This document shows positions 3,676-61,511 of a stretch of 64,000 bases of DNA, in pieces. The stretch covers positions 124,001 through 188,000 of the IMG/VR virus record IMGVR_UViG_3300013104_000001; one strand, 5' to 3'. Positions within the stretch are counted from its first letter, which is position 1. Each line of letters begins with the position of its first letter. The position numbers and the translations under genes are program-made. The notes under the pieces were generated by a model. It saw nothing but the letters and a program-made list of their open reading frames with translations. It was not told the origin of the DNA and did not search any database.

Positions 3676-3714
3676 GGCATAAGAGGAGGGCGAAAGCCCT
3701 CCTCTATTTATGCT
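3676..3714. terminator. bidirectional hairpin with GCATA/TATGC flanks
   Basis: GGCATA-AGAGGAGGGC-GAAA-GCCCTCCTCT-ATT-TATGCT between convergent genes. Confidence 0.8.
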
Positions 3715-3723
3715 CGTTTTTTT

Positions 3724-4521
3724 TTATTTCAGATCTTTCGCCAACTTTTCAGCTGAGTTCGTAAGTGCAGTACCAGTCGCAATGAATAGTGTATTGCATA
3801 CGCTATACAGATCAATGGCACGTGCCGTATCCAGCATGACTTTCGCCAGCAGATCAACATCGGACTTGGTGACTGTAATATCGCCTGACTCAATTTGCGC
3901 ATAGATAACGTCCGTGAGGTCGGCGACACGTTTAACTGAAGCGTTCATGTCACGCACATTTCCGCGCTTGATTGAGCCTACCAGTTTATTGAAGTCATCG
4001 TACGCCGTGATGAATTCAGTCATGTTAGCGAAGCGAGAAGCAAACGAGGCATTGGTGACGTCTTTACCGCCTAAGCTTTTACCCAGTACCGACTCAACTT
4101 TACCCAGCACCATCTTATCAATGCCTGGTGCATAGGCAACGCTTGCTTTACCGGCAGCGACTTGACCTAACCAGCTTTGCAGCTTATTCAGATGATCAGT
4201 CTCTACGAACAGGCAGAAATTACGTACTGTCTGCAGGTTACCGATCCACTCCTTATAAGAGATGTTCAGACGGGCAGGCTGGAACACTTGCAGATCCATG
4301 AAGTCAGTGTAGTTGTGTGTCTTCACGGCTTTTGCAACCGGTGAGAAATCGGCATACACCATCGCGGAGGAGGTGTCATAGATTTTGTCACTGAAGAACT
4401 TCTTTAAACCATCAGAGAAGCTACGAAAGGTGGCAATAAGGTCTAGGCCTTCTAAGCCTGTACCAGTCGACTCACGCAGTCCACGGTAATCGGCTTCTAG
4501 GTTATCAATGTTGTACGACAT
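3724..4521 (-). CDS. virion head protein (phiKZ gp153-like) with N-terminal G-L-E propeptide motif
   Basis: Reverse-strand gene between RNase H and uvsX, as in phiKZ-like phages; TGLEG at residues 21-25. Confidence 0.65.
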   Translation of the reverse strand: MSYNIDNLEADYRGLRESTGTGLEGLDLIATFRSFSDGLKKFFSDKIYDTSSAMVYADFSPVAKAVKTHNYTDFMDLQVFQPARLNISYKEWIGNLQTVRNFCLFVETDHLNKLQSWLGQVAAGKASVAYAPGIDKMVLGKVESVLGKSLGGKDVTNASFASRFANMTEFITAYDDFNKLVGSIKRGNVRDMNASVKRVADLTDVIYAQIESGDITVTKSDVDLLAKVMLDTARAIDLYSVCNTLFIATGTALTNSAEKLAKDLK

Positions 4522-4541
4522 ATGTACTCCGTGAGGGAAAA

Positions 4542-4571
4542 GTAATCTGTTACATAAGATGACTTATTATG
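4542..4571 (+). promoter_or_regulatory. putative middle promoter for uvsX
   Basis: GTAATCTGTTAC-ATAAGATGAC followed by TATG at 4568. Confidence 0.5.
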
Positions 4572-4603
4572 AAGGTATTATTAATTAAAAAGGACCACAC
4601 ACA

Positions 4604-5995
4604 ATGTCAATCTTGTCATTCGGCGAGTATGTTGAGAAGTCACGCCCTATTCGTCCGTTTCTGAATATTGGCGCTGGCTTTGACATACCAACCGGAAGCT
4701 ACCGTTTAGGTAAGCACGGTGAATCTATTCTTAATGGTGGTCTTGCTCCCTTTATTGCTATCGTGGGTAAAGGCAACACCTTTAAGACAGCGATCGGTTG
4801 TTTTATGCTAACCCGCGTACTGGAGCGCTACAATAACTCTAACGCCCTGCACTACGACACCGAGTGTACTTTCAGTCCTGAGCGTTTAATCAGTCTGACC
4901 AACCGCCTGGGTCCTGACGCAGCGCTGGAGTGGTTAGAGAACGAACGTGTGTATCTGACCGATGACTCTGTCATTAAAGGTAACCAGTGGTTTAAAAACT
5001 CTGTTCAACTTTATGCAGAAGCGAAAGGTAAAGGTAAGACCGGTACCCTGCCGTTTGTTGATAAAGACGGCAATCTGATCAAGCACCCATACCCAACCGT
5101 CAACTTCGGCGACTCCATGTCTGAGATGAAATTCAACGACCTGGAAAAGAACTACGCCAAGATGGAGATCGGCCAGGGTGAAATGCAGACCGAAGCCATG
5201 CGTGTGTCAAACGCCAAACGCATGTTAATCGAGAAGACACAAGGTTACGCCAACGCCGGTGGCCTGTATGTGATCATGACTGCGCACTTGGGCAAAGAAC
5301 TCAACCTTGATGGTAAACCACAAGAGAAGAAAACCACCTTCATGAAACAAGGTGACAAGATCTCTAAGGTACCTTCACAGATTCTGTCTCTGCCAAACAA
5401 CGTCTGGGAAATCTCAACCGGTACACAGCTCATTGATAAGAACACCAAAGAGTGGATGTATCCAAAAGCAGGTCGTGATGATGTGGATACCAACGGTAAC
5501 CCAGATCTGATCACCCTGGTTGCGAAGAACCTGCGCGGTAAGAACGGTCCTTCTGGTGTGCCGTGGGAATTTGTGATGTCTCAGTCTGAAGGCCTGCTGC
5601 CACATCTGACCGAGTTCCATTACATCAAGAACGCCGGTCGTTATGGTCTGGGTGGTAATGACCGTAATTACTATGTTGAGTTATGCCCTGATGTGAAACT
5701 GCAGCGTACGCAGGTCCGTGGTAAGATCGATGAAACACCAGAGCTGCAACGCGCCCTGGAGATCACCATGGAAATGTGTCAGATGCGTTTCCTCTGGCAT
5801 ACCCGCGATCCGAAGTACAACATGACTCCAGAAGAACTGCGTGTTGGCCTGGAGAAGAAAGGGTACAAATGGGAGCAGTTACTTAACACCCGTGGGTTCT
5901 GGACTTATGAAGAAGATAATCATCCATTACCATTCTTAAGCACAATGGACTTACTCCGCATGTATCATGATGAGTACCGCCCATACTGGCTGTAA
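4604..5995 (+). CDS. uvsX: UvsX/RecA-like recombinase (phiKZ gp152-like)
   Basis: P-loop GKGNTFKT, YDTE, GDSMS, IMTAHL, KNLRGKNGPSG; size and synteny fit. Confidence 0.88.
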   Translation: MSILSFGEYVEKSRPIRPFLNIGAGFDIPTGSYRLGKHGESILNGGLAPFIAIVGKGNTFKTAIGCFMLTRVLERYNNSNALHYDTECTFSPERLISLTNRLGPDAALEWLENERVYLTDDSVIKGNQWFKNSVQLYAEAKGKGKTGTLPFVDKDGNLIKHPYPTVNFGDSMSEMKFNDLEKNYAKMEIGQGEMQTEAMRVSNAKRMLIEKTQGYANAGGLYVIMTAHLGKELNLDGKPQEKKTTFMKQGDKISKVPSQILSLPNNVWEISTGTQLIDKNTKEWMYPKAGRDDVDTNGNPDLITLVAKNLRGKNGPSGVPWEFVMSQSEGLLPHLTEFHYIKNAGRYGLGGNDRNYYVELCPDVKLQRTQVRGKIDETPELQRALEITMEMCQMRFLWHTRDPKYNMTPEELRVGLEKKGYKWEQLLNTRGFWTYEEDNHPLPFLSTMDLLRMYHDEYRPYWL

Positions 5996-6009
5996 GTGTA
6001 CCCAAATGC

Positions 6010-6038
6010 AGGAGGGGTTTCCCCTCCTCTTTATACCG
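6010..6038 (+). terminator. hairpin with TATACCG tail
   Basis: AGGAGGGG-TTT-CCCCTCCT-CTT-TATACCG just after uvsX. Confidence 0.7.
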
Positions 6039-6072
6039 TCAGTAGAGGGAACTAAGCGAATAGGAAAGCAGT

Positions 6073-10909: not shown

Positions 10910-10933
10910 GTGGCCTCCAAAATAAGTTACACC

Positions 10934-10948
10934 TACATTACATAGGTG
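10934..10948 (+). promoter_or_regulatory. putative early (vRNAP) promoter
   Basis: TACATTAC-ATAG-GTG, one mismatch to the phiKZ early consensus TATATTAC. Confidence 0.55.
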
Positions 10949-11506
10949 ATAGTACGTGTATTAAAAGGAATCGTTATGCGCTTTCTGAAAAAGTTAGCAC
11001 TAAAGCGCTGCATGGCGATGTTGAGTGAGGCTAAGGGGGAAACCTTTACCATTCAAGAAAGCCTGCGTGTGTTCGAGGTGTTGGATAAAGTGTTATCTAC
11101 AAACGACATCATAAAATATTTCGATACGCGGGTTACGCTCTCCATACAAATGGAGATGCAGATACCAAATGCGGCATTGATGCTTGACTCGCTTGCCGAA
11201 ATAAATGGATTCATTCAGAAGGATATCGATGCTACATTGCCTGAGTACGGTGTGTTGTTTTCAGCCTTACGAGGGAAACAATTAATTTCGCTTTACGATT
11301 GGTTGTCAGATGGCGATGATCACGTTATAGATGCATTGCAATTTTACCGACTCTTTAACGAAGAATTGAGTCAATTAATTACCGTTATAGTGAACTGTGA
11401 AGATCAGACTACCCAGCAGTATTATCTGCGTAGATTACAGCCGCTCTACAATGAATTACTGGAAACCGTGTACGCTGCATTACACTGTGGGTTGTTGAGT
11501 CTCTAA
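10946..11506 (+). CDS. hypothetical protein
   Basis: Long ORF; true start probably ATG at 10976 after AAGGA. Confidence 0.7.
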   Translation: MIVRVLKGIVMRFLKKLALKRCMAMLSEAKGETFTIQESLRVFEVLDKVLSTNDIIKYFDTRVTLSIQMEMQIPNAALMLDSLAEINGFIQKDIDATLPEYGVLFSALRGKQLISLYDWLSDGDDHVIDALQFYRLFNEELSQLITVIVNCEDQTTQQYYLRRLQPLYNELLETVYAALHCGLLSL

Positions 11507-12046: not shown

Positions 12047-13117
12047 ATGGCCGGCGTAGATATTGGCAGCTCCATCCAGAACTCGATTAAGTCAGCGGGT
12101 GCAATCACGACCAATGCGGTGAACAAGGCGTCGTCTACGTTTGTCGGTGGAATCAAAGAGAACCTGGCGTTAATCGATGACAAAACAAAATCAGCGGTCC
12201 AAACGCTTAACTCGTATAAAGATACGGCGATTGGTTCAGTCGACGGGTTCATCAAGAAGGTCTCTAACGGCGCTCTAAGCATCTCAGAGCTCTCCAGCAT
12301 CATTGATGTACGTAATGGCATCAATATCGACTACATGCGCTTATATCGTCGCCTAGGCGATGCAGCGGGATTCCCAATGGATTCAATTGCTGGCATGACC
12401 AGTGATCTGAAGTTGGAAATTGCAAATGTCCTCGATGCGTATTCGAGTAAGAACTATACCTACCTGTTAAATGCAGCGGGTATCAAGATCAATGTGAACG
12501 ACGCTTCTTACAAAGCAATGCAGTTGATCTCAGGCGTCATCAGTAAGTATTCTGAAAGTGACTCTAAGTTTAACTACATTGTCGATGAAGCCGCACAGAT
12601 CGCTTTCCTAAACGTGATGGTACGTAACGCAGTACAGGTCGGTCTCTATAGCGGGATTGATACACTGCTTAACCAGTACACGATTAAATCAGAAGGCCTT
12701 AAGAACTTGGCCAACTGTGCATCGATCTCTATTCGTACCGGCGATGTCTGGACCACACAGTACATCGTTGATAAAGTCGGCATCGGAACCGTGGTTTCAT
12801 TGAACACCGATTTCCTGACTGATATGTTACGTTTCTTTAAATTCAAGTCAGATGCAACACCGGCGCAGTACCCTGATTATCTGAATACATTAATCTATTC
12901 GCTGAACCTGGCTGATGCAGATTGGGCGTTCAGAAACTTCGGTACCGTACGGGCATTGAACTTGAAGCCTTTTACAATGGCGTCTACTGATGCAATTACT
13001 CTGTTCTCTAACACTGAAACGTATCGACAACATGTAATGATTGCGAAGTCTTATCCGTCAAAAGACAAGATGGATCTGTTAACACAGATGTATCCGCAAT
13101 TGGCCATTGTGCAATAA
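12047..13117 (+). CDS. virion structural protein
   Basis: GAGGA RBS; 356 aa; position next to tail genes. Confidence 0.55.
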   Translation: MAGVDIGSSIQNSIKSAGAITTNAVNKASSTFVGGIKENLALIDDKTKSAVQTLNSYKDTAIGSVDGFIKKVSNGALSISELSSIIDVRNGINIDYMRLYRRLGDAAGFPMDSIAGMTSDLKLEIANVLDAYSSKNYTYLLNAAGIKINVNDASYKAMQLISGVISKYSESDSKFNYIVDEAAQIAFLNVMVRNAVQVGLYSGIDTLLNQYTIKSEGLKNLANCASISIRTGDVWTTQYIVDKVGIGTVVSLNTDFLTDMLRFFKFKSDATPAQYPDYLNTLIYSLNLADADWAFRNFGTVRALNLKPFTMASTDAITLFSNTETYRQHVMIAKSYPSKDKMDLLTQMYPQLAIVQ

Positions 13118-13120
13118 ATC

Positions 13121-13163
13121 GACATAGCTGAGGAAGGAGCGCAATGCTCCTTCCTCTATGCCA
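13121..13163. terminator. bidirectional hairpin with CATA/TATG flanks
   Basis: GACATA...GAGGAAGGAGC-GCAA-TGCTCCTTCCTC-TATGCC between convergent genes. Confidence 0.8.
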
Positions 13164-13169
13164 CTTAAA

Positions 13170-13856
13170 TTATTGTACCAATTCCAAACACGGTCGCCAA
13201 GCTTGGTTACCAGTGGTGGTATAATCGTTACCACCTACTTTAGTAAATGCCTGACCGGCACTTTTTACCGAATAGTACTGAGTTGAACCGATGGTACATA
13301 TCTGGCCCGACAGCGTACCGTATGAGTTATGCCCTAAATCAGCAACGCTGTAATGCGCCCACTTATCACCTTCTTGAGATGCAGGCAGGGTGCCATCATC
13401 CCAAATGTTGTACATAAGACGATTCCACTCCGACCCATGTGACATGACTGGATCGACCCCGCCGTCGTACGCTGCTGGCGATACCTTCTGAACGGTCAGG
13501 TTCCGTACCCGATAAACCTTACCAGCTATAGTAATAGTTTTCTGGCCGTCAACGACTTTTGCGCTATCTATGTTACTACGACTAACTCCTGTTCTAATTG
13601 GTTTCTTAGCAACATATAAAACCTTTCCGTCGATCAGAAACTTTAACCACGGAAAAGTATCGGCGCCAGAGATTGCCGTACCGTAGTTAGCCATCCCTAC
13701 AGCGCTACTCAAAGTAGAGGCTTTAATGAAATCCTGGCTCTGGACCTCTCCATAAAAACCAGTATATCTTGTTGGGTCATTAGGTGTTTCATAATAACCA
13801 ATCAATGCATCGCCCGGTGCAGTCGGTCTACGACCTACCATTAACAATTCTAACAT
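13170..13856 (-). CDS. tail/baseplate-associated protein, phiKZ gp131-family paralog
   Basis: GFYGEV...FI, WLKFLIDGKVLYVAKKPIR, GSEWNRLMY, WRPCLELV; ATG at 13856 has an AGGAGG RBS. Confidence 0.75.
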   Translation of the reverse strand: MLELLMVGRRPTAPGDALIGYYETPNDPTRYTGFYGEVQSQDFIKASTLSSAVGMANYGTAISGADTFPWLKFLIDGKVLYVAKKPIRTGVSRSNIDSAKVVDGQKTITIAGKVYRVRNLTVQKVSPAAYDGGVDPVMSHGSEWNRLMYNIWDDGTLPASQEGDKWAHYSVADLGHNSYGTLSGQICTIGSTQYYSVKSAGQAFTKVGGNDYTTTGNQAWRPCLELVQ

Positions 13857-13906
13857 CAGACCTCCTGACAAGAGTAATTATAGAATCGCGCTAAACTTTA
13901 TTTAAA

Positions 13907-13948
13907 CAGCATAAGGGGAAGGAGCATTGCGCTCCTTCCCCTATGCTG
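13907..13948. terminator. hairpin with CAGCATA/TATGCTG flanks
   Basis: CAGCATAAGGGGAAGGAGCATTGCGCTCCTTCCCCTATGCTG. Confidence 0.8.
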
Positions 13949-13961
13949 GCTTATTTTTTTT

Positions 13962-14669
13962 TTAAGCTTTACCTACCAGCTCTAATACCGGGCGCCAACC
14001 ACTACGGGTTTCTGATGTGCCGTTGTATAACTGATTAATAGCATTGTAATTACCGTAGCTACCACCACGAACAATGCGGTAACTTCCTGGGTTACCAGTG
14101 TAATAAGATATTTCCTGGCAAATCGTTTGCGAGGCGATATTACTGTCTATCCCAATATCCACGGATGAGAGGTTATCCCATTTAATCCCGTCTTCAACTT
14201 CACACAGACTGATTTCGGAGTTGGCTAGCACCGGATACATTAGTCGGTTCCATTCTGAACCGGCAATGGTCTTATTAGGGTCATTATTAATGACGGTGCC
14301 GCTAACCAAACGTAGGTTATAGAGGTAGCCATTAATAGTCACCTGTTTGCTGGTCATTGCTATCCCGCAGTTATTGGGTGATATACTGTTTCTAAAGCAG
14401 GCTTGTGCTACAAACAGAATTTTCCCATCACAAAGAAACTTCAACCACCCTTTATCGGCATTGCCAGCAATGGCCGACCCACCACTAATCCCACTCGTAT
14501 TATAAAGTGCCAGACCGGTAATGAGATCTGTTGCCGCTACCCGCCCAAAATATCCGGCTGTTTGATCAGCATTACGTGAATAGGAGAATAATAAATCTTG
14601 TCCACCAGGACCAAGTTCAGAGGGGATTTCTACTTTCTTTTTACCGCCCACAAATAACATCTCTAACAT
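13962..14669 (-). CDS. tail/baseplate-associated protein, phiKZ gp131-family paralog
   Basis: GYFGRV, WLKFLCDGKILFVA, GSEWNRLMY, GWRPVLELV; clearly paralogous to 13170..13856. Confidence 0.75.
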   Translation of the reverse strand: MLEMLFVGGKKKVEIPSELGPGGQDLLFSYSRNADQTAGYFGRVAATDLITGLALYNTSGISGGSAIAGNADKGWLKFLCDGKILFVAQACFRNSISPNNCGIAMTSKQVTINGYLYNLRLVSGTVINNDPNKTIAGSEWNRLMYPVLANSEISLCEVEDGIKWDNLSSVDIGIDSNIASQTICQEISYYTGNPGSYRIVRGGSYGNYNAINQLYNGTSETRSGWRPVLELVGKA

Positions 14670-14708
14670 TCACTTACCCCACGAGTTCAAGTAGCTATAA
14701 GATCGATC

Positions 14709-14746
14709 GACATAGAGAGAGGGCAAAAGCCCCCTCCCGTATGTTC
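14709..14746 (-). terminator. hairpin with TATGTCG tail on minus strand
   Basis: GACATA-GAGAGAGGGC-AAAA-GCCCCCTCCC-GTATGTTC. Confidence 0.6.
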
Positions 14747-14861: not shown

Positions 14862-16853
14862 CTAGTTACGGTAGGTACCTTCAACAAAGGCCGAGATGAT
14901 GTTGCCTGCCAGTGAAGATGAGAACGTTGCTGCCATCTGCGTTGGTGATACCCACTGTTTAACATCCAGCTGAGTCTTAGCGAGCATACGTGCTAATTTG
15001 TCTGAACGATAAATCTGCTCATTCAAACCTTGGCCAGAAAGGATGGCCAGGTAATCCGAGTAGTTGTTATCATCGGTCATCAATTTAGCTGCTGCACGCG
15101 CTGGGTTAGTTAAATCACCAGGATTCAATGCCGGGTCAATTGGCGCATGAAGCATGGGTGACATATCAGCAATTGAGAAGGTAACATCAATACCCAGTGG
15201 TTGTTTATCTTTAGTCCAACCAACGTTACCAACACCACGTTGAATAGACATCGAGTCAAGCATGCCTAAACGTGTCTGTGAACGACCTTTGGAGAATGCT
15301 TCCACTAAGAACGGGGAAGTATAGGCCTGAGCACCCACAGAACGTGGCAGGATCATGTTTAACAGACAAACCAAGGGAATGATAAGGTTTTGCACACGAC
15401 TCACTGGGTGACCGTATGGAGACCTTAAATTGATGGTGTACGTTTCCCGTGGGAGTGATGCGGTAGACCCTGTCCAGTGTTGAGGGATTTCGATATACCC
15501 TTGACCCAGTAACAAGTTAACAATACCGCCCAGTCCAGTACCGGATGAGTAACCTTGCACAACTTGCATGCCGGCATCAATCAATCCATCAATGGGTGCA
15601 AAGCCTGTCTTACCGCCACCTGCCATGAAACGTGCATCAGCAGCTGCAGTAGACGCACCGTTCAGGATTCCCGCTAACTGGTTCTCGCCAAATGAACTTT
15701 GGAAAGATTCGCCGACCGCGCCATTATGGTTAACCTTGAACCCGATGAAACTGCCACCGTCACGTAATTCCGATTCCATGTGATCCAGCACACTGTTAAA
15801 GAACCCAGATGCCTTTTCTACATCGGTCACAGATTTAGTGTCGCCGTTATCCGCAACCGTTACATTGGTCCCGGTGTCGCCATCGGAATCCATGCTGTAG
15901 TTACCGGCACCTTCCATGCTGCTACCCGATGCATCTTTAACTTGACCTAATCCCGCATTAAAGTACGAGTCCAGGTAGTTAGCAAGTGTTGAGTTAGGGC
16001 TATCGCCTGCAGGGTCAGTCCAGGTACGACCGTGGTTCTGAATCGTGGTGATTGCACTGTCACGGTTATTGACCGTTGCTGATTCAATACGCTGACCTAA
16101 TGCTTTCTGCCAACGAATGTGTTTACGGTTAGCACGGTTAGCAAGATAGAAAAGGTCAACAGAACCATCAGCACGCCAGAGACCAGGCAACATGTTTGCA
16201 AGCAACTTACGCTCATTTGGCGTATAGGCCGAGAAGTCAAAGGTCTGCTCCTTTACAGTAGTGTGTCGTGTGCGGAAAGCAGGCGGGATAATCCCCATGT
16301 TGATCATGATGGCATTCAACATGTTGGTGCATGACTTCCAGTATAATGGCATGGCATTTTTCGAATAATAGAACTTCGATTTAGGAATACCCATAAGCCA
16401 TGTCACGGTAGTGTACGTAACAGAGATTGCTTGGATCGGCCAGTGAATGATCGCCGATGCAGCTTCTGCAAAATGGAACAACCAACCCGGTGCTCGACCA
16501 GTACGTGCCAGGTAGGCAGCATTCGCATCGAACATATTGGCTAAGAAACTGAACAGGCCATTGAACTCTGGAACCCCCATGCGGAAATAAACCACATCGG
16601 CATTATCATCAATGTTTGCACTGTAGTCGGACCCCATGCCACCAAACTGATCATTCCACCAACGTGAGGCACGAATGTCACAAGTCGGTGACCATTGAGG
16701 AGGAGGGTTAATCCAGAAGTTACCACCCGGGGTTGTATCCGTGAATTTATTCCGGGCCTTTTGATATTGCCTGCGGTCTTTCAACCCGTCATCAATATTC
16801 ACACCAGACAACATAAATGCCTGTTGTAAATAATCATGGTCTTTGATATTCAT
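14862..16853 (-). CDS. virion structural tail protein (phiKZ gp182-like)
   Basis: FTDTTPGGNFWINPPPQW, LRSPYG, YTSPFLV; directly follows the gp181-like gene. Confidence 0.75.
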   Translation of the reverse strand: MNIKDHDYLQQAFMLSGVNIDDGLKDRRQYQKARNKFTDTTPGGNFWINPPPQWSPTCDIRASRWWNDQFGGMGSDYSANIDDNADVVYFRMGVPEFNGLFSFLANMFDANAAYLARTGRAPGWLFHFAEAASAIIHWPIQAISVTYTTVTWLMGIPKSKFYYSKNAMPLYWKSCTNMLNAIMINMGIIPPAFRTRHTTVKEQTFDFSAYTPNERKLLANMLPGLWRADGSVDLFYLANRANRKHIRWQKALGQRIESATVNNRDSAITTIQNHGRTWTDPAGDSPNSTLANYLDSYFNAGLGQVKDASGSSMEGAGNYSMDSDGDTGTNVTVADNGDTKSVTDVEKASGFFNSVLDHMESELRDGGSFIGFKVNHNGAVGESFQSSFGENQLAGILNGASTAAADARFMAGGGKTGFAPIDGLIDAGMQVVQGYSSGTGLGGIVNLLLGQGYIEIPQHWTGSTASLPRETYTINLRSPYGHPVSRVQNLIIPLVCLLNMILPRSVGAQAYTSPFLVEAFSKGRSQTRLGMLDSMSIQRGVGNVGWTKDKQPLGIDVTFSIADMSPMLHAPIDPALNPGDLTNPARAAAKLMTDDNNYSDYLAILSGQGLNEQIYRSDKLARMLAKTQLDVKQWVSPTQMAATFSSSLAGNIISAFVEGTYRN

Positions 16854-16875: not shown

Positions 16876-16902
16876 AAAAGGAGGAGAGGGTTTCCCCTCT
16901 CC
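16876..16902 (-). terminator. hairpin between gp181-like and gp182-like genes
   Basis: GGAGAGGG-TTTC-CCCTCTCC with an A-run on the + strand (U-run on minus). Confidence 0.6.
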
Positions 16903-16912
16903 CGATTACTGA

Positions 16913-34620: not shown

Positions 34621-34649
34621 AGGGCAGGGGAAACCCTGCCTTTATGCCG
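34621..34649 (+). terminator. hairpin with TATGCCG tail
   Basis: AGGGCAGGG-GAAA-CCCTGCCTT-TATGCCG. Confidence 0.8.
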
Positions 34650-37668: not shown

Positions 37669-37736
37669 GGGGGTCGGCATGACTGACCCCCAGTTTTAAC
37701 ATTCGCCATGAAGGGGCCTGGAGCCCCTTTTTTTTT
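37669..37736 (+). terminator. tandem hairpins, second with canonical U-tract
   Basis: GGGGGTCGG-CATGA-CTGACCCCC and AAGGGGC-CTGGA-GCCCCTT-T7. Confidence 0.75.
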
Positions 37737-39116: not shown

Positions 39117-39165
39117 CGGCATAAAGGAGAGACCCCCGCGAGGGAGTCTCTCCTGTCTTATGCTG
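39117..39165. terminator. bidirectional hairpin with CGGCATA/TATGCTG flanks
   Basis: AGGAGAGAC-CCC-CGCGA-GGG-AGTCTCTCCT between convergent genes. Confidence 0.8.
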
Positions 39166-40048: not shown

Positions 40049-40049
40049 A

Positions 40050-47595: not shown

Positions 47596-47605
47596 TCGTA
47601 ATAAC

Positions 47606-47649
47606 CTGGGTTGGTGGGGTGACCTGCTAACCCAGTTACTTTTATGCGG
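47606..47649 (+). terminator. hairpin with TATGCGG tail
   Basis: CTGGGTTGGTGGG-GTGA-CCTGCTAACCCAG...TTTTATGCGG. Confidence 0.65.
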
Positions 47650-47659: not shown

Positions 47660-49855
47660 ATGATCCTTTATTCAAACGACTGGATTAAATACCAAACGCA
47701 ACCACACGTGCATTACGAGACACCGAATAAGTCTTTTACTGAAATGGCCGCGAAGTATTACGGTATGAATGTGAAGAACTGTTTATTCCATCTCTCGTTA
47801 TTCAACCGTTCGTTGATTGGTGTCGATCCCCATTCTCCCAATTTGACTACTGAGCAGAAGACAGCAATTGCGGCAGAGTGTGCGATTAACTTTTGGTATT
47901 TTATTCGTGAGGTCATCCGCATTCCTGTAAAAGGTGTGGAAGGTGGTATCTCGTATATCGCTAACCGCGGAAACCTGGCGCTATCATGGCTCTACCTTTG
48001 CCACATCGATACCTTTCTGATACAACCACGTCAGACCGGTAAGTCGGTATCTACTGACTGTTTGATGTTGTGGCTCATTTACTTTGGTTCATCGAATAAC
48101 TCCTATTCACTGATTACCAAGGGTGACCTTCGTGCGGAGAACATTAAGCGTATCAAAGGGATGCGTGATATGTTACCGGGCTATCTTGTTCACCGTGATA
48201 AGAAAGACCCAGACAACTCCGAGTGGATCGGTTATCTGAACCTGAAGAACGTTTATAAAGCAGCGATCGCTCAGGGTAACGAAACCGCAGCAAACAACTT
48301 AGGTCGTGGTATTACCACGGCAACCATCCACATCGATGAAGGCCCGTTCCTTTCATTCATTGACGTCACGGTTCCGGCAGCACTGAACGCCACAACCAAC
48401 GCCCGTCGATATGCTGAGATGAACGGCACACCTCACGGCAACATCTTTACAACAACGGCTGGACGACGAGATTCACGTGAAGGTAAATACTTCTACGGCA
48501 TCTTGCAGAAAGCGGCTGTGTGGTCAGAGATCTATTTGGATTGCGTTGACTTCAAAGAACTCTCTGAACTTATCATGAACAACAGCGGTTCGGCGGCACC
48601 GGCTGTCAACATTACCATGTCACATCGTCAGCTAGGGTATACTGATGAATGGCTGCGTAAAGTTATCGCACAGAACCAGAACACCAAAGATTCAGCGGAA
48701 CGTGACTATTTAAACCGTTGGACCTCTGGTAACTTGACATCACCTCTTTCCATCGCACTGAACGAAAAGGTCACATCGTCAATGCGTGAAGTCGTCTGGG
48801 AAGAAGTCACCAAACAGAAATATATCATTCGCTGGTATATCTCAAAACGTGACATTGAAGAGAACCGAGGCAAGACCCATTATGTGATTGGGATGGATAC
48901 CTCGGATGCAACCACCACCGGGGATGGTATCACAGTTGTTATTCGTGATATCCGAGACATGGGTGTGGTCGGTGTCATGAACTTCCGTAACACTAACTTA
49001 GTACCTGTCTCCCAGATGGTTGCTGAGCTTTTGATTACTCACACTAACTCAACTCTGGTTATCGAACGTAACCGTGCTCAGAACTTAATCGATCACTTAT
49101 TGATTGAACTTCCTAAGCGTGGTATCGATCCATTCAAACGCATCTACAATACTCTGACAAACGATCAGACCGTTCGTCGTACAGAGTACCAGGAGATGGC
49201 GTCAACACCACTGGGCCAACGTACGCAGGAGTTCTATGACTCCAAACGTACTTGCTTTGGTTTCTGGACAGGTGCTCAAACTCGTTCGTTACTGTACGGT
49301 ACTGTGTTACAAGAATCGGCTAAGCAAACAGGCTGGCTTGTTCGTGATGCGGAACTGATTAGTCAGATTACTGGACTGGTTGCTAAGAACTCGCGTGTAG
49401 ACCACAAATCAAACTCACACGATGACTTGGTTGTTGCCTGGCTGCTCACGTATTGGTTTATCACCGATGCACGTCACCACGATTGCTACGGTATTAACGT
49501 TGGACAGGTAATGTCCGTCAAAGAGCGTACTCAAGTCTTCTCCGTGCAAGAAGAGGCATGGATCGAACAGCAAGAGCGCTATCGTGCCGAGTTGAGCGAC
49601 ATTATGGATCAACTCAAATCAACCACGAACCCAATGCTCCTCACCCGCCTTGAGAAGAAACTGGTGTTTGTGAAATCGAAGATTGTAGCAACGGATGAAG
49701 CTGCAGTCACTGTAGACCAACTATTACAAGAGGCGAAAGAGGCGAGATCATTGCGTGCACGAACTGATCGTGTTAACAGTTCTCCACTCCGTCGCCAAAT
49801 GGGCTACAAGCCACCTAGCGCACGACGTACGTTTGCTGGGGCCGGTTTCTTCTAA
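47660..49855 (+). CDS. terL: terminase large subunit (phiKZ gp25-like)
   Basis: Walker A QPRQTGKS, Walker B IHIDE, TTTAG coupling motif, nuclease IGMDTS and HDDLVVAW. Confidence 0.93.
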   Translation: MILYSNDWIKYQTQPHVHYETPNKSFTEMAAKYYGMNVKNCLFHLSLFNRSLIGVDPHSPNLTTEQKTAIAAECAINFWYFIREVIRIPVKGVEGGISYIANRGNLALSWLYLCHIDTFLIQPRQTGKSVSTDCLMLWLIYFGSSNNSYSLITKGDLRAENIKRIKGMRDMLPGYLVHRDKKDPDNSEWIGYLNLKNVYKAAIAQGNETAANNLGRGITTATIHIDEGPFLSFIDVTVPAALNATTNARRYAEMNGTPHGNIFTTTAGRRDSREGKYFYGILQKAAVWSEIYLDCVDFKELSELIMNNSGSAAPAVNITMSHRQLGYTDEWLRKVIAQNQNTKDSAERDYLNRWTSGNLTSPLSIALNEKVTSSMREVVWEEVTKQKYIIRWYISKRDIEENRGKTHYVIGMDTSDATTTGDGITVVIRDIRDMGVVGVMNFRNTNLVPVSQMVAELLITHTNSTLVIERNRAQNLIDHLLIELPKRGIDPFKRIYNTLTNDQTVRRTEYQEMASTPLGQRTQEFYDSKRTCFGFWTGAQTRSLLYGTVLQESAKQTGWLVRDAELISQITGLVAKNSRVDHKSNSHDDLVVAWLLTYWFITDARHHDCYGINVGQVMSVKERTQVFSVQEEAWIEQQERYRAELSDIMDQLKSTTNPMLLTRLEKKLVFVKSKIVATDEAAVTVDQLLQEAKEARSLRARTDRVNSSPLRRQMGYKPPSARRTFAGAGFF

Positions 49856-49900: not shown

Positions 49901-50224
49901 ATGTCACAATTCAATTGCGAGGTACCTATGGTGGACCCGAAAGACTTAAATGTACTGGTAGGGTTGATCAGGCAACTGGAACTCTCGCCGTTGCCTTACA
50001 ATCCCACCCATGTTCTGCAAGAAGGGATGGCTGAACTGAGCGATCGCATCATCGCCAAGATCCGTCGTCATGTCACTGATCAATACGGCTACACCAATCT
50101 ACAGTTTGTGCAAGCGATGCAAACCAGCGGATTCAGTGTATTGCCATTACGACAAGATCTGGTTTCTTGTCATCTGTACGGTTTACCTACCACTAAAGGG
50201 ATGGTCCAAATCCGTCCTCATTAA
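49901..50224 (+). CDS. hypothetical protein
   Basis: ORF behind the GTA-N6-GAC element at 49864 and before a hairpin. Confidence 0.7.
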   Translation: MSQFNCEVPMVDPKDLNVLVGLIRQLELSPLPYNPTHVLQEGMAELSDRIIAKIRRHVTDQYGYTNLQFVQAMQTSGFSVLPLRQDLVSCHLYGLPTTKGMVQIRPH

Positions 50225-50242: not shown

Positions 50243-50284
50243 CAGCATAAGGAGAGGAGCGTAATGCTCCTCTCCTCTATGCCG
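50243..50284. terminator. bidirectional hairpin with CAGCATA/TATGCCG flanks
   Basis: AGGAGAGGAGC-GTAA-TGCTCCTCTCCT between convergent genes. Confidence 0.8.
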
Positions 50285-50299: not shown

Positions 50300-50716
50300 T
50301 TACGCGTCAGGGTTCTGCGGTTGCAGCTCGACGTCTGGCGTTGTTACCGGTTTGTCGATCACAACAGAACCGTCAGTTGGCGGCGCTTCTGGATCGGCTT
50401 TACCAAAGTTTGGATCAACCGGCTCCGGTTCTTCCGGGCCCTTCTCCATGATCAGGGTCAGACCTTCGATGCCGTTAGACAGTCTGGTGATCAAACCGTC
50501 AATGCCTTCGATGCCTGAACCGATTTTGAAGTAATCAGGGTATTTGGCGGCCAGACCTGACTCAATCAGATTACCAGCTGGGTAGTCCATTGATTCTAAG
50601 CCTGAGTTAACATAGCCAGCTTTGTAAGCTTGCAGTCTGTTAAGGTCGGCCGTAAGCTCTTCAATACCTGCGGCGATATCGATGGGCTGACCAGACTTGG
50701 TAGTAAGGATAGTCAT
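50300..50716 (-). CDS. putative internal head protein, mostly G-x-E propeptide plus acidic Pro-rich tail
   Basis: AGIE, SGLE, SGIE, NGIE; N-terminus aligns with 50784..51746. Confidence 0.6.
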   Translation of the reverse strand: MTILTTKSGQPIDIAAGIEELTADLNRLQAYKAGYVNSGLESMDYPAGNLIESGLAAKYPDYFKIGSGIEGIDGLITRLSNGIEGLTLIMEKGPEEPEPVDPNFGKADPEAPPTDGSVVIDKPVTTPDVELQPQNPDA

Positions 50717-56522: not shown

Positions 56523-56548
56523 GGCGGGGGTAAAACCCCGCCTTTTAT
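56523..56548 (+). terminator. intrinsic terminator
   Basis: GGCGGGG-GTAAAA-CCCCGCC-TTTTATT. Confidence 0.8.
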
Positions 56549-56549
56549 T

Positions 56550-56830
56550 CTGATTTATTTTTTGGTTTTAAATCAAATATACTATTACGTCAAATATGTA
56601 AAAACTATGTAATTGTCGACATAAGTGACTTAATAGTACTGAATGAACTTATTATCTAAAAAAAAAATATATTAATATATTAGTAATAAGCGTAAGAGTA
56701 AATTTTCGTAGGAAATTTATGAATTACGTTGGATAAAAGGAGAAATCAGACTGGGGTCTGATTTCTCCTAAATTGAATGTAAATGAATGAGTTGTTCATG
56801 TATTTTAGACGGCGCGCGGAAGCTGCGCGG
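56550..56830. other. very AT-rich non-coding region with palindromes
   Basis: A-run leading into the perfect palindrome AATATATTAATATATT (56666-56681); 14-bp hairpin at 56738-56769. Confidence 0.6.
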
Positions 56831-56932
56831 ACTCCGTCCTTGCCCTCTATGTGAATGTTATGGATGAATCCATCCAACCTTCCCGGACTCCTTTATAGTC
56901 TCAGAAGGATACCATCTCTCATTATAGAGGTC

Positions 56933-57583
56933 ATGACCATGTACGAACGCATCAATCTGATTACACTGAACGAACTCTCTGTCTATTCTGAAGTTCAGCG
57001 TGCGACAGACAACCGAACAATTAAATCAACTTCAGTCTCTGTGTACTGGGGTGATAAGCTCTTAGCGAAGACGCCTAAGATGACCAGTGCTATGGATTAC
57101 GCCTACATCGGTGTGTTGTTGTGGAATCCGAAGTTCATGGCATGGATGACAGCTGAGATCCGTAAGAACATTATCGACACGTTTCGTAGTGCGGACTTCA
57201 TCCTAGGGATCAAGCTTAACCCAGGTCGTGTCTTGACCGATGGAATCACCTACCCGTACTTGGGTAAAGAAACCCACTCTTGCGTATCAATCCAGTTGAA
57301 ATGTCAGTTACTGGGATACGAACACAACAAAGTGGATATGACTGGTCAACTACGTATGACCACAGAGATCTTGTCTGGTGATCATGTGGTGTCCGATACA
57401 CGTGTCTATGGTCCGATGGAGACACCAGTGTTACCCGAACTGGATGCGTTGTTAGCGGTTGCCTATAAAGAGATCCCTGAGGATGAGGTCAGACTAACCA
57501 TCCGTGATCCTGACACAGGGCTTCCGCGTCATGACGTGCCAATCAACCCTGAGACAAAGTTACCTCTCTACGGTAACCGTTAA
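56933..57583 (+). CDS. hypothetical protein
   Basis: ATG at 56933/56939 after GAGG. Confidence 0.7.
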   Translation: MTMYERINLITLNELSVYSEVQRATDNRTIKSTSVSVYWGDKLLAKTPKMTSAMDYAYIGVLLWNPKFMAWMTAEIRKNIIDTFRSADFILGIKLNPGRVLTDGITYPYLGKETHSCVSIQLKCQLLGYEHNKVDMTGQLRMTTEILSGDHVVSDTRVYGPMETPVLPELDALLAVAYKEIPEDEVRLTIRDPDTGLPRHDVPINPETKLPLYGNR

Positions 57584-57592: not shown

Positions 57593-57619
57593 GGGAGGCT
57601 TCGGCCTCCCTTTATGCCG
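57593..57619 (+). terminator. hairpin (UUCG) with TATGCCG tail
   Basis: GGGAGGC-TTCG-GCCTCCC-TT-TATGCCG. Confidence 0.8.
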
Positions 57620-57741
57620 GTCTGTATTTTAAAACTAAGTTGACTAAGCTTATGAAAGAAATAAAATCTTTCACCCGAGCTAAGGGTAACGTAGAGGTTT
57701 TAGATATATGCCGATTAAATTAATAAGAGAGAAAACAATCA

Positions 57742-59753: not shown

Positions 59754-60089
59754 ATGATAATGCTACCCAATGTTAGGCTTAACAGTGAGGATGAGCAGTA
59801 CCGGATCTATCTGGAAAACAACTTCGACTATCAAAGCCCTAAGTTGCATTTAGATCATGAAAAAGGACGCAATGAATACCTGATCGGGGATTTGATGCTG
59901 TCTTGTTTTGGCGATCATTTTTATCTGGCGATTAAGAGCAGTCGGCGCAAGACCGTGATTGCATCAGCAAAAGTTTTAGATAACGGTTCTGTCGGCATTT
60001 ATCTAAACCAATGCTTTGCAAACATGCGTAACAAAGCCGTGTTGATTGAAGACTTGCGTAACAGAGTCCGATACCACCTCTACTGTTAA
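59754..60089 (+). CDS. hypothetical protein
   Basis: 111 aa; C-half resembles 61201..61476. Confidence 0.65.
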   Translation: MIMLPNVRLNSEDEQYRIYLENNFDYQSPKLHLDHEKGRNEYLIGDLMLSCFGDHFYLAIKSSRRKTVIASAKVLDNGSVGIYLNQCFANMRNKAVLIEDLRNRVRYHLYC

Positions 60090-60120
60090 TATCTTAACCT
60101 ATCTTATGATTAGATAGATT

Positions 60121-60172
60121 CCTTCGCCTACTAACCTCCTCACGGGGTAAGTAGGTTGAAGGGTCTATGCCG
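60121..60172 (+). terminator. long imperfect hairpin with TATGCCG tail
   Basis: CCTTC-GCCTACT...AGTAGGT-TGAAGG-GTC-TATGCCG. Confidence 0.65.
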
Positions 60173-60202
60173 ACTTGTTTGTAATCAAATAAATTTTATG
60201 TC

Positions 60203-60217
60203 TATATTACGAATGTG
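60203..60217 (+). promoter_or_regulatory. early (vRNAP) promoter
   Basis: TATATTAC-GAAT-GTG with AT-rich upstream. Confidence 0.75.
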
Positions 60218-60274
60218 TAATTGTTGGCCAACAATATATGGCATCATTTTTATGAACCTTAATTAATCGGAGTA

Positions 60275-60799
60275 TTGTGTATGATGCTAGAAGAAACTAT
60301 CCAAGTTAGACCTGTGGCAAAATCACGTGAAGAAACCATGGATCTGCTGGAAGACCTCAACGATCTGAATGAGTGGTTAAGTGAGCACGGCAATCCTGGC
60401 TGTAAACGTCCAGCGCGTTATCCTGCGTTTGCCGTCATGAACGGTAACCGTGCTGCGACTTACGGGTTAATTCAATTCAACAACGACCTGGTACCCGACA
60501 TTCAGATCTGGCGGTTAGTGGCCAACTATCTGCATCGTCGCGCTGTAGACCCTGCTAAGAACCTGCGCATCATCATGAAGGCTGTTGTCATGAATGAACA
60601 CGCTAATCCCAAAGCAGGCAACAAAGTGATGGAGCCTAATCTGGACGTCACTGATTACCTGGTTGATTTGGCATCAGATAAACCAGTGTATGCTTTTAAT
60701 CCATCAGTTCTGGTCAACGCGGTACCGGGCGTCGGCAAGTATGCTAACTTGAAAGTCTGGAACTGGCGTATTGGTTTGGAGATCGCCCCCGTACGGTGA
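60275..60799 (+). CDS. hypothetical protein
   Basis: GGAG RBS; start probably ATG at 60281/60284. Confidence 0.7.
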   Translation: MCMMLEETIQVRPVAKSREETMDLLEDLNDLNEWLSEHGNPGCKRPARYPAFAVMNGNRAATYGLIQFNNDLVPDIQIWRLVANYLHRRAVDPAKNLRIIMKAVVMNEHANPKAGNKVMEPNLDVTDYLVDLASDKPVYAFNPSVLVNAVPGVGKYANLKVWNWRIGLEIAPVR

Positions 60800-60811
60800 T
60801 AAGGTATTACA

Positions 60812-61186
60812 ATGGATCAACTCACTATTACTGATCTCACCGCAGATCAGTTTGCTTCACTTGCAGAAAGTACTTCGCACCGTATTGCGTTAAACTACCC
60901 AACGAAGTGGTTATGTGACAAAGAAGAGGATACGTCATATAGCCACTTGGTTATTTCAACGCGCTACATCGATAAAGAGAACCCATCGGCACGACTTCCC
61001 TTTGCAACCCGGATTCCCATTGAGGAAGGTATTATCCAACGTGTTAATCTACTCTGGTCGCAGGATACGAAGTCCTGTCTTTTAGAAACCCACATCGCGG
61101 GTTGTATCAAATATCAGCATCTTGAGTTACCTGCCCGCAGTAAATACAAGATGGTCTCATTAACTGTACGATTAGATAAGCTTTAA
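60812..61186 (+). CDS. hypothetical protein
   Basis: AAGG RBS. Confidence 0.7.
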   Translation: MDQLTITDLTADQFASLAESTSHRIALNYPTKWLCDKEEDTSYSHLVISTRYIDKENPSARLPFATRIPIEEGIIQRVNLLWSQDTKSCLLETHIAGCIKYQHLELPARSKYKMVSLTVRLDKL

Positions 61187-61200
61187 TAAGGAGCACTTGC

Positions 61201-61476
61201 ATGAAACTTACTTTATGCCAAGCTAATGGATATTCGCTCATCCACGCTGGATACCACAGTCACACCCCGGTCAACAACGTCACCTTGCTGGAAGGCGAAG
61301 TACGCTGGGAATCTAACCGTATGTTCATCGGCGATAAAGAGATCGCTCAAGTGAAATCTAACGGCCATGTGCATCTGAACGCAACCGTGATCCGATCTAA
61401 CCTCGGGTACATCACAACCATCCGCAATCAGATCCGCTTTATGTTCCGCACCAGAAAGCCGGCTACACTGCATTAA
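61201..61476 (+). CDS. hypothetical protein
   Basis: AAGGAG RBS. Confidence 0.7.
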   Translation: MKLTLCQANGYSLIHAGYHSHTPVNNVTLLEGEVRWESNRMFIGDKEIAQVKSNGHVHLNATVIRSNLGYITTIRNQIRFMFRTRKPATLH

Positions 61477-61477
61477 C

Positions 61478-61511
61478 GAGGAGGAGGGATTACCCTCCTC
61501 CTCCTATGCTG
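61478..61511 (+). terminator. hairpin with TATGCTG tail
   Basis: GAGGAGGAGGG-ATTA-CCCTCCTCCTC-C-TATGCTG. Confidence 0.8.

What the first reader, a model, noticed from the sequence alone, without database searches (positions are those of the whole stretch)
3676..61511. Strand-aware hairpin + TATGCYG signal in place of U-tract terminators
Seen: purine/pyrimidine-rich stems at gene ends are followed within about 0-8 nt by a TATGCYG-like motif rather than directly by a U-run (34621, 47606, 57593, 60121, 61478; variant TATACCG at 6010). At all four hairpins between convergent genes (3676, 13121, 39117, 50243) the motif is on both strands. At plus-strand tandem junctions it is only on the downstream side; 13907 and 14709 are tandem sites with both flanks. 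Established: TATG is the phiKZ late-promoter core. Inference: a phage-RNAP-specific termination or RNA-processing signal, or terminator-promoter fusions.
Basis: partly seen in the sequence, partly recalled or inferred. Interest (0 to 1): 0.62.

Follow-up and report, generated by a model that had tools for sequence, protein, structure and literature searches.

The report
phiKZ-type hairpin-plus-TATGCYG transcription terminators
The hairpin followed by TATGCYG at gene ends is real and far from chance, and it is this jumbo phage's version of a conserved terminator already mapped in phages phiKZ and 201phi2-1, where transcripts end inside the motif.

Summary
The window is part of a 287-kb jumbo phage related to the Erwinia Agricanvirus phages. 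Genome-wide, 71 of 125 hairpin sides facing the end of a gene carry TATGCYG with at most one mismatch. Only 3 of 89 sides facing the other way do (p about 3e-18). The motif starts 0-3 nt after the stem.

The hairpins start a median 14 nt after a stop codon, and 39% of the units face a convergent gene. At junctions shared with phages AH06 and RAY the stems change by compensating substitutions, while the flank stays fixed, variants included.

This is the terminator motif published for phiKZ (hairpin + YTTATKYYGT) and for 201phi2-1. All eight published 201phi2-1 transcript end sites fall inside the motif, seven of them at Y6 of TATGYY|G, 8-9 nt after the stem. Those eight terminators also worked in uninfected host cells.

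The best reading is an intrinsic terminator in which UUAUGCY replaces the U-tract. It is probably not specific to the phage RNA polymerase, and nothing here supports a fused promoter. Canonical U-tract terminators also occur (13 hairpin sides). A survey found the flank in eight chimalliviruses but not in EL, PCH45 or SPN3US. It is a new member of a known kind. No RNA data exist for this phage.

The parts
3675..3725 (.). Two-way terminator between convergent genes 3319-3675(+) and 3724-4521(-). Hairpin 3682-3705. The + flank is TATGCTC at 3709-3715, followed by a run of nine T. The - flank is TATGCCC at 3681-3675.
   Evidence: the junction is conserved in AH06 and RAY
6010..6038 (+). Terminator after the RecA/UvsX-like gene (4604-5995). 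Hairpin 6010-6028, flank TATACCG at 6032-6038. The same variant holds a mapped transcript end site in 201phi2-1 (230,027).
   Evidence: AH06 and RAY keep the variant flank while the stem covaries. 201phi2-1 site:
13120..13163 (.). Two-way terminator between 12047-13117(+) and 13170-13871(-). Hairpin 13130-13156. The + flank is TATGCCA at 13157-13163 and the - flank is TATGTCG at 13126-13120.
13907..13948 (.). Unit between two minus-strand paralogous genes, with exact TATGCTG on both strands (13942-13948 on +, 13913-13907 on -). Hairpin 13914-13942. A run of ten T follows on the + side.
   Evidence: Its stem is nearly the same as the one at 13130, and the two genes are absent from AH06 and RAY
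14708..14738 (-). Terminator after minus-strand gene 14862-16853. Hairpin 14715-14738, - flank TATGTCG at 14714-14708. The + side has only TATGTTC (two mismatches) and then a T-run.
34621..34649 (+). Terminator after the head maturation protease gene (33831-34616). Hairpin 34621-34642, flank TATGCCG at 34643-34649.
   Evidence: orthologous units in AH06 and RAY have different stems
39117..39165 (.). Two-way terminator between 38680-39114(+) and the tail tube/sheath genes (39179-42152, -). Inner hairpin 39125-39154. The two motif copies (GGCATAA and TTATGCT) pair and extend the stem. Exact TATGCTG on + (39159-39165) followed by ten T; exact TATGCCG on - (39123-39117).
   Evidence: 22 pairs, 4 of them compensatory
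47598..47649 (+). Terminator just upstream of the terminase gene (47660-49855). Long hairpin 47598-47639, flank TATGCGG at 47643-47649.
   Evidence: 14 pairs, 5 compensatory; flank unchanged in three phages
50243..50284 (.). Two-way terminator between 49901-50224(+) and 50300-50716(-). Hairpin 50250-50276. Exact TATGCCG on + (50278-50284) and exact TATGCTG on - (50249-50243).
56523..56552 (+). Intermediate form. Hairpin 56523-56542, then TTTTATTCTG (TATTCTG, one mismatch) and a T-rich tail.
57593..57619 (+). Terminator after 56855-57583. Hairpin 57593-57610 with a UUCG loop, flank TATGCCG at 57613-57619.
60117..60172 (+). Terminator after 59754-60089. Long imperfect hairpin 60117-60165, flank TATGCCG at 60166-60172.
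61478..61511 (+). Terminator after 61201-61476. Hairpin 61478-61503, flank TATGCTG at 61505-61511, then a T-rich stretch.
16882..16903 (-). Ordinary hairpin plus U-tract terminator (CCUUUUU) after the 2241-aa gene. It shows that the canonical class exists alongside the TATGCYG class.
37710..37730 (+). Ordinary hairpin plus U-tract terminator (UUUUUU).

Best explanation
These are intrinsic (hairpin-dependent) transcription terminators of the conserved phiKZ type.

Anatomy. A 9-11 bp GC-rich stem, usually closed by a tetraloop (UUCG and GAAA are the commonest), is followed directly by the fixed tail (C)YU-UAUGCY|G.

Proposed steps:
1. The polymerase transcribes the tail. The 8-9 nt RNA:DNA hybrid behind it then starts with weak U/A pairs (UUAU) and ends at a pyrimidine, with G as the next nucleotide to add.
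2. The hairpin forms and strips the RNA out of the hybrid.
3. The transcript ends at Y6 of TATGCY|G.

UUAUGCY therefore does the job of the U-tract. The pyrimidine-then-G junction resembles a general pause site of multisubunit RNA polymerases.

Between convergent genes one palindromic hairpin carries the tail on both strands and stops transcription from both sides. There the two motif copies pair and lengthen the stem, which is often followed by a true U-run.

What is shown and what is inferred:
- Shown in this genome: the anatomy, the strand-awareness, the coupling to stop codons, and conservation of the flank with covariation of the stems.
- Shown in a relative (201phi2-1, from published coordinates laid on its sequence): the 3' ends lie at Y6, and the terminators work with host polymerase.
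- Inferred: that the same holds in this phage, and the pause mechanism.
For: - Strand-aware enrichment: 71 of 125 sense sides against 3 of 89 antisense sides.
- Geometry: gap of 0-3 nt, stems of 9-11 bp, median folding energy -19.8 kcal/mol, hairpin start a median 14 nt after the stop codon, 29 of 74 units facing a convergent gene.
- Flank consensus C-Y-T-T-TATGCCG-N-Y-T.
- Six of six junctions examined in AH06 and RAY keep a unit. The stems change by compensating substitutions (5 of 14, 4 of 22 and 2 of 10 pairs) while the flank, variants included, does not change.
- The published phiKZ motif is BCCYCCCCHWWDGGGRRGGBYTTATKYYGT, found at 61 terminators (PMC10914365). Its flank pattern finds 20 sites in this genome, 17 of them directly after a hairpin.
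- The published 201phi2-1 transcript end sites 183876, 132419, 84756, 229201, 179552, 230027 and 289834 fall on Y6 of TATGYY|G, and 189851 falls on position 5.
- Those eight terminators worked in uninfected P. chlororaphis.
- The same flank follows hairpins in phiKZ, 201phi2-1, Eowyn, RP31 and Proteus phage 10, at 3-10 per 43-50 kb where about 0.1 is expected by chance.
Against: - No transcript ends are available for this phage. No public RNA run holds it.
- Long-read 3' ends cannot tell termination from cleavage, and their precision is about 2 nt.
- The tail has only 3-4 U, so how the RNA is released is not explained by textbook rules.
- The near-invariance of A2, G4, C5 and G7 suggests sequence-specific reading beyond a weak hybrid.
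- In this phage the 5' arm of the stem is purine-rich (78%), the opposite of the published phiKZ consensus.
- The position 10 nt upstream of the inferred RNA end is C here, not the G of the E. coli pause consensus.
Confidence: 0.8

Rival explanations
1. Terminator-promoter fusion. Besides ending the upstream transcript, the TATG after the hairpin acts as a late-promoter start site (G4 = +1) for the non-virion RNA polymerase. Each junction would then restart transcription for the next gene.
For: - TATG with G as +1 is necessary for phiKZ late transcription (PMC4666361).
- The beta-like subunit GP123 binds non-template TATG (PMC12809450).
- This phage's GP123 homologue keeps 7 of the 14 pocket residues, plus one conservative Ser-to-Thr change.
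- 45 of 74 units are followed by a co-directional gene.
Against: - 29 of 74 units point into a convergent gene.
- Spacing to the next start codon is loose (14-790 nt, median 81; three further units overlap my called start) and some leaders would be 14-20 nt long. Spacing to the stop codon is tight.
- A separate promoter-like motif follows several units.
- P119L in phiKZ and the region upstream of the capsid gene here use TATGTA without a hairpin.
- The conserved C5-Y6-G7 is not part of the promoter consensus.
- In the literature read here, the late promoters are described as having no conserved sequence upstream of TATG.
Confidence: 0.12
2. RNA-processing or stability element. Long transcripts are cut just 3' of the hairpin at UAUGCY|G by a host or phage endonuclease, and the hairpin then protects the new 3' end.
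For: - A fixed single-stranded sequence next to a stem is typical of nuclease recognition sites.
- Published 3' ends cannot separate cleavage from termination.
- A reporter drop in a terminator trap is also expected after cleavage.
Against: - The 3' end lies 8-9 nt from the stem, the classic distance for intrinsic termination.
- The elements work in uninfected cells of a different host than this phage's, and the flank is shared by phages of Pseudomonas, Ralstonia, Klebsiella, Proteus and Erwinia. A cutting enzyme would therefore have to be universal.
- ARNold classed the phiKZ sites as intrinsic terminators.
Confidence: 0.07
3. Polymerase-read termination signal. The tail is recognised as sequence by the phage polymerase, for example by non-template TATG entering the promoter pocket of the beta-like subunit. 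That would cause a pause that lets a hairpin terminate without a U-tract.
For: - T1, A2, T3 and G4 are nearly invariant at a fixed distance from the stem in distant genera.
- A structure shows a TATG pocket in the phiKZ enzyme, and it is partly conserved in this phage.
- The three sampled chimalliviruses that lack the flank use U-rich tails instead.
Against: - The 201phi2-1 elements work with host polymerase.
- Units follow replication genes (6010, after the RecA/UvsX-like gene) as well as structural genes (34621, 39117). This phage's temporal gene classes are unknown, so this says little about which polymerase reads them.
- At the moment of release TATG lies 2-5 nt behind the RNA 3' end, not at -3 to +1 as in the promoter complex.
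- Conservation runs on through C5, Y6 and G7.
Confidence: 0.15
4. DNA-level element (cruciform, recombination, nicking or packaging signal), or a chance or compositional artefact.
For: Inverted repeats could extrude as cruciforms. Near-identical stems at 13130, 13914 and 50250 point to duplication.
Against: - The orientation follows the direction of gene transcription, not the absolute strand.
- The elements sit just after stop codons.
- The stems covary, as expected for RNA structure.
- Permuted-motif controls rule out chance.
Confidence: 0.01

Closest known systems
Conserved phiKZ intrinsic terminator motif (Putzeys et al. 2024, Microlife; PMC10914365): BCCYCCCCHWWDGGGRRGGBYTTATKYYGT at 61 terminators mapped by ONT-cappable-seq
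   Same: A GC-rich stem-loop is followed directly by YTTATGYYGT. It lies after gene ends, with two-way copies between convergent genes. The host phage is a nucleus-forming jumbo phage with two multisubunit RNA polymerases. I confirmed the motif in phiKZ sequence.
   Different: Here the 5' arm is purine-rich and the 3' arm pyrimidine-rich, the reverse of phiKZ. Position 5 is almost always C (TATGCYG against TATGYYG). In phiKZ many tandem junctions carry the motif on both strands, whereas here none of 81 plus-strand tandem junctions does. No transcript ends have been mapped for this phage.
201phi2-1 terminator motif A and the A/B combination (PMC11512511)
   Same: Same hairpin plus TTTATGYYG. 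Published transcript end sites fall on Y6, and the variant TATACCG is also used. The A/B combination with a lengthened stem matches the two-way units here, where GCATA and TATGC pair.
   Different: Stem polarity differs as for phiKZ. The 201phi2-1 elements have been tested in vivo; those here have not.
Canonical Rho-independent terminator (hairpin plus 7-9 nt U-tract)
   Same: Same hairpin geometry and the same 8-9 nt distance from stem to RNA end. Works without phage factors in the relative. Thirteen true examples coexist in this genome.
   Different: The tail is a fixed mixed sequence (UUAUGCY) with only 3-4 U. A, G, C and the following G are conserved.
phiKZ late promoter (TATG, with G as +1; Yakunina 2015; GP123 pocket, IUCrJ 2026)
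   Same: Shares the four letters TATG on the non-template strand.
   Different: The promoter needs no hairpin and has no conserved CYG. The units here are tied to stop codons and often face convergent genes.
Elemental pause consensus of bacterial RNA polymerase (G-10 Y-1 G+1).
   Same: The inferred RNA end is a pyrimidine followed by G. In 201phi2-1 the position 10 nt upstream is also G.
   Different: In this phage that position is C. The pause idea is an inference, not a test.

Membership tests
phiKZ-type conserved terminator motif | A GC-rich stem-loop is followed directly by YTTATKYYGT | tested here: met
   74 units have a gap of 0-3 nt and the flank consensus CYTT-TATGCCG-N-Y-T. The published flank pattern finds 20 sites, 17 of them directly after a hairpin.
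phiKZ-type conserved terminator motif | Lies downstream of genes, in the sense orientation, mostly in intergenic DNA | tested here: met
   71 of 125 sense sides against 3 of 89 antisense sides. The hairpin starts a median 14 nt after the stop codon.
phiKZ-type conserved terminator motif | Two-way copies between convergent genes | tested here: met
   10 of 19 convergent hairpins carry the motif on both strands and 6 on one strand. Window examples: 3676, 13121, 39117, 50243.
phiKZ-type conserved terminator motif | Transcript 3' ends accumulate at the motif | not testable with these tools
   No RNA run holds this phage. In 201phi2-1, 8 of 8 published transcript end sites lie in the motif.
phiKZ-type conserved terminator motif | Stem polarity as in the published consensus (C-rich 5' arm, G-rich 3' arm) | tested here: not met
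   The 5' arm is 78% purine in 74 units. Eowyn and RP31 share this reversed polarity. I treat this as lineage variation, not a defining feature.
phiKZ-type conserved terminator motif | The host genome is a chimallivirus-type jumbo phage with virion and non-virion multisubunit RNA polymerases | tested here: met
   77-78% nucleotide identity to Agricanvirus phages, with polymerase subunit genes in the window. A GP123 homologue lies at genome 10312-12000.
Canonical Rho-independent terminator | A U-tract directly after the hairpin | tested here: not met
   The tail is UUAUGCY. Only 13 of 125 sense sides have at least 5 U among the first 8 nt.
phiKZ late promoter | TATG placed to drive a downstream gene, with the transcript starting at G | tested here: inconclusive
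   TATG is present, but 29 of 74 units face convergent genes and the spacing to the next start is loose. Transcription start sites cannot be tested here.

The most novel reading that the evidence does not exclude
The fixed tail TATGCY|G is not just a weak stand-in for a U-tract. It is a sequence-specific pause and release signal read by the phage's own multisubunit RNA polymerase, possibly through the same non-template TATG pocket that marks late promoters. One four-letter word would then mark both the starts and the ends of transcripts in a large part of the Chimalliviridae. Lineages that lack it (EL, PCH45, SPN3US) would fall back on U-tracts.
Probability: 0.15. Interest if true: 0.65.

Novelty: new member of a known kind. 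Interest (0 to 1): 0.33.

Why it matters
It gives a simple rule for annotating transcript ends in this phage group: the RNA is predicted to end at Y6 of hairpin-TATGCY|G. An earlier MEME scan of the Agricanvirus phages found only motifs of little or no significance and did not follow them up (PMC6690015).

The element is shared by at least six named genera, plus the unclassified Proteus phage 10, infecting Erwinia, Klebsiella, Proteus, Ralstonia and Pseudomonas. It is missing from three other sampled lineages, which sets up a comparative test of how a multisubunit polymerase can terminate with only 3-4 U.

These compact two-way terminators may also be useful parts for synthetic biology in enterobacteria.

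Tried and rejected
- RNA evidence. The run search found four holders of the stretch, none on record as RNA (their kind is not recorded). This is no test of expression.
- Supplementary tables of the phiKZ and 201phi2-1 transcriptome papers are not held, and Ceyssens 2014 is not held. I therefore could not compare start and end site lists. I used the eight end-site coordinates printed in the 201phi2-1 text instead.
- Aligning all intergenic hairpins blindly on the stem end gave a blurred profile, because stems often run into the motif. I replaced it with a per-side motif search.
- A loose rule (48-nt fold of -12 kcal/mol or lower) has about 10% background and picks up many weak folds in coding DNA. 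I used it only as a control.
- An exact-pattern scan of IMG/VR gave mostly chance single hits. Only a few contigs carry several true units (L048/L103, L113, L073).
- I first explained the hairpin-less TATGCCG at window 57707 as part of a 23-codon ORF. I dropped that because the second copy of the repeat has no open frame.
- The GP123 pocket comparison (7 of 14 residues identical plus one Ser-to-Thr change, at 25% overall identity) is too weak to settle whether this phage's polymerase reads TATG.
I redid the step with coordinates only.

Full report
**What the window is.** The 64-kb window is bases 124001-188000 of a 287,406-bp genome. The genome is 77-78% identical in DNA to the Erwinia jumbo phages of the genus Agricanvirus: AH06, RAY, Ea35-70 and others. 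The window holds genes for virion RNA polymerase subunits, the head protease, the tail sheath and tube, the terminase and a RecA/UvsX-like protein. I made my own approximate gene calls for the whole genome, 330 genes covering 90% of it. Stop codons in these calls are reliable. Start codons are less so.

- Across the genome there are 119 exact TATGCYG sites. Of these, 56 are intergenic, although only 9.5% of the genome is intergenic, and about 50 of the 56 sit right after a strong hairpin.
- Starting from hairpins instead of the motif, I took 107 intergenic hairpin loci. Sides that lie downstream of a gene end carry the motif with at most one mismatch in 71 of 125 cases. Sides facing the other way do so in 3 of 89 (Fisher p 3e-18).
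- At plus-strand tandem junctions the motif is on the downstream side only in 41 cases, on the other side only in 2, and on both in none.
- Of 19 hairpins between convergent genes, 10 carry it on both strands and 6 on one.
- Forty permuted control motifs gave a mean of 8.4 hairpin-adjacent hits, against 54 for the real motif.

**Anatomy of the 74 units.**
- TATG starts 0-3 nt after the stem in 71 units.
- Stems are mostly 9-11 bp. Loops are mostly tetraloops (UUCG 11 times, GAAA 9 times). The median folding energy is -19.8 kcal/mol.
- The 5' arm is 78% purine.
- The flank consensus extends to C-Y-T-T-TATGCCG-N-Y-T, followed by A/T-rich sequence.
- The hairpin begins a median 14 nt after the upstream stop codon (interquartile range 6-30).
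- The next co-directional start codon lies 14-790 nt away (median 81); three further units overlap my called start.
- 29 of 74 units face a convergent gene.
- Only 21 of 74 have a T-run within 23 nt after the motif.
- An ordinary U-tract directly after the hairpin occurs on 13 sense sides, so the two classes coexist at roughly 5:1.

**Conservation.** Six junctions of the window could be compared with AH06 and RAY, and all six keep a unit.
- The stems differ by compensating changes: 5 of 14 pairs at 47606, 4 of 22 at 39117 and 2 of 10 at 6010.
- The flank is unchanged, including the odd variants TATACCG (6010) and TATGCGG (47606).
- Both the fold and the flank sequence are therefore under selection.

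**What is already known.**
- An ONT-cappable-seq study of phiKZ reported that 61 predicted intrinsic terminators share a stem-loop followed by a TTAT region, with consensus BCCYCCCCHWWDGGGRRGGBYTTATKYYGT (PMC10914365).
- The 201phi2-1 study found the same motif ('motif A', n = 59). Combinations of motifs gave longer stems and stronger termination, and eight terminators worked in uninfected P. chlororaphis (PMC11512511).
- The flank here, YTTATGCYGT, fits that consensus. The published flank pattern finds 20 sites in this genome, 17 of them after a hairpin, and 9 sites (6 after a hairpin) in 50 kb of phiKZ.

**Where transcripts end in the relative.** I laid the eight transcript end-site coordinates printed in the 201phi2-1 paper on its GenBank record. 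Seven fall on the sixth letter of TATGYY|G: 183876, 132419, 84756, 229201, 179552, 289834, and 230027, whose motif is TATAC[C]G. The eighth, 189851, falls on the fifth letter. The transcript therefore ends 8-9 nt after the stem, which is the standard distance for intrinsic termination. TATG is part of the RNA tail, and the conserved G7 is the next nucleotide that is not added.

**Mechanism.** The best reading is an intrinsic terminator in which UUAUGCY takes the place of the U-tract.
- The first part of the hybrid (UUAU) is weak.
- The stop at a pyrimidine before G resembles the general pause preference of multisubunit polymerases. This rests on my own knowledge and was not tested.
- Between convergent genes one palindrome serves both directions. 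The two motif copies pair and lengthen the stem, and a U-run often follows on one side (3676, 39117), matching the 'A/B' class of 201phi2-1.
- The anatomy and conservation are shown here. The 3' ends and the factor-independence are shown only in a relative. Transfer to this phage, and the pause idea, are inference.

**The promoter idea.** TATG, with G as +1, is indeed the phiKZ late-promoter core, and the beta-like subunit GP123 binds it on the non-template strand. Several results argue against a promoter role for the hairpin-linked copies:
- 39% of units face convergent genes.
- Units are tied to stop codons, not start codons.
- A separate promoter-like motif, CCTACATTAC-N4-5-GTGATA, occurs at 18 intergenic sites, all on the + strand. 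It is conserved in AH06 and RAY at window 10933, and it often lies 15-25 nt after a unit.
- The phiKZ promoter P119L has no hairpin and reads TATGTAGAC.
- Upstream of the major capsid gene here there are two TATGTA sites without a hairpin, and the hairpin plus TTATGCCG comes after its stop codon.

An extra promoter role at some tandem junctions is not excluded. This phage's GP123 homologue keeps 7 of the 14 pocket residues, plus one Ser-to-Thr change.

**Distribution.** I surveyed 34-64 kb around the virion polymerase beta gene in eleven phages and counted hairpin sides with the flank.

| Phage | Hairpin sides with TATGYYG |
|---|---|
| This phage | 10 |
| AH06 | 8 |
| RAY | 9 |
| Proteus phage 10 | 3 |
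| Klebsiella phage Eowyn | 7 |
| phiKZ | 10 |
| 201phi2-1 | 5 |
| Ralstonia phage RP31 | 7 |
| Pseudomonas phage EL | 0 |
| Serratia phage PCH45 | 0 |
| Salmonella phage SPN3US | 0 |

About 0.1 per locus is expected by chance. The three phages with no such sides have U-rich tails instead. Stem polarity is purine-first in this phage and, from the listed examples, in Eowyn and RP31. It is pyrimidine-first in phiKZ and 201phi2-1. These are samples, not whole genomes.

**Verdict.** 'Phage-polymerase-specific' is not supported, and 'promoter fusion' is disfavoured. This is a new member of a known kind, not reported for this clade in the papers I could search; an earlier MEME scan of the Agricanvirus phages found only motifs of little or no significance and did not follow them up. 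What remains open, and moderately interesting, is how a tail with so few U and such strict sequence releases the RNA. It is also open whether the shared TATG links termination to promoter recognition.

**Limits.** There is no RNA data for this phage and no supplementary tables. Gene starts are approximate. End-site precision in the cited work is about 2 nt.

Noticed in passing
window 10933-10955 (+); genome-wide 18 intergenic + strand sites (e.g. genome 9236, 41901, 82835, 103137, 192853): A promoter-like motif, CCTACATTAC-N4-5-GTGATA, lies upstream of genes and often 15-25 nt after a hairpin-TATGCCG unit. It is conserved in AH06 and RAY at the orthologous junction. It loosely resembles the phiKZ middle-promoter element AAanTTACc.
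   Followed up: partly
window 13170-13871 (-) and 13962-14669 (-): Two paralogous genes of about 235 aa match the middle of virion structural protein families (phrog_1062, phrog_16120). Both are absent from AH06 and RAY. They are bracketed by three two-way units, and the stems at 13130 and 13914 are nearly identical, so a gene-plus-terminator module seems to have been inserted and duplicated.
   Followed up: partly
window 57677-57730 and genome 75440-75500: A two-copy repeat, CCCGAGCTAAGGGTAACGT...TATGCYG...TAAATTAA, lies about 95 nt after a terminator unit in both places and has no hairpin. Only one copy sits in an open frame (window 57652-57723, 23 codons). Its function is unknown. It could be a promoter with a TATG start.
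   Followed up: partly
window 42152-42339: The 190-nt divergent region between the tail sheath gene and the structural operon is almost identical in AH06 and RAY. It has no hairpin unit but carries TATGG on both strands, so it may hold late promoters.
   Followed up: no
genome-wide; window 3716-3725, 13954-13963, 39167-39176: T-runs of 9-10 nt lie 2-6 nt after the motif on one side of several two-way units. At minus-strand junctions 13907 and 14709 the T-run is on the + strand, against the direction of the flanking genes.
   Followed up: partly
L004 (SPN3US), L125 (PCH45), L124 (EL): These chimalliviruses have no hairpin-TATGYYG units in 34-50 kb. In SPN3US and PCH45 the hairpins are followed by U-rich tails such as YTTTATTT; EL has only three U-rich tails. 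The terminator tail type differs between lineages of the family.
   Followed up: partly
L048/L103 (IMGVR_UViG_3300026393_000009, 50 kb), L113, L073 (231-kb contig): Uncultivated viral contigs carry two to four clear hairpin-TTATGCCG units within about 10 kb. They are probably further jumbo phages of this kind.
   Followed up: no
genome 10312-12000 (outside the window): This is the homologue of the phiKZ non-virion polymerase beta-like subunit GP123 (25% identity). Of the 14 residues lining the TATG pocket, 7 are identical (S144, F151, K158, K190, H331, S334, Q466) and one is a conservative change (S402T).
   Followed up: partly
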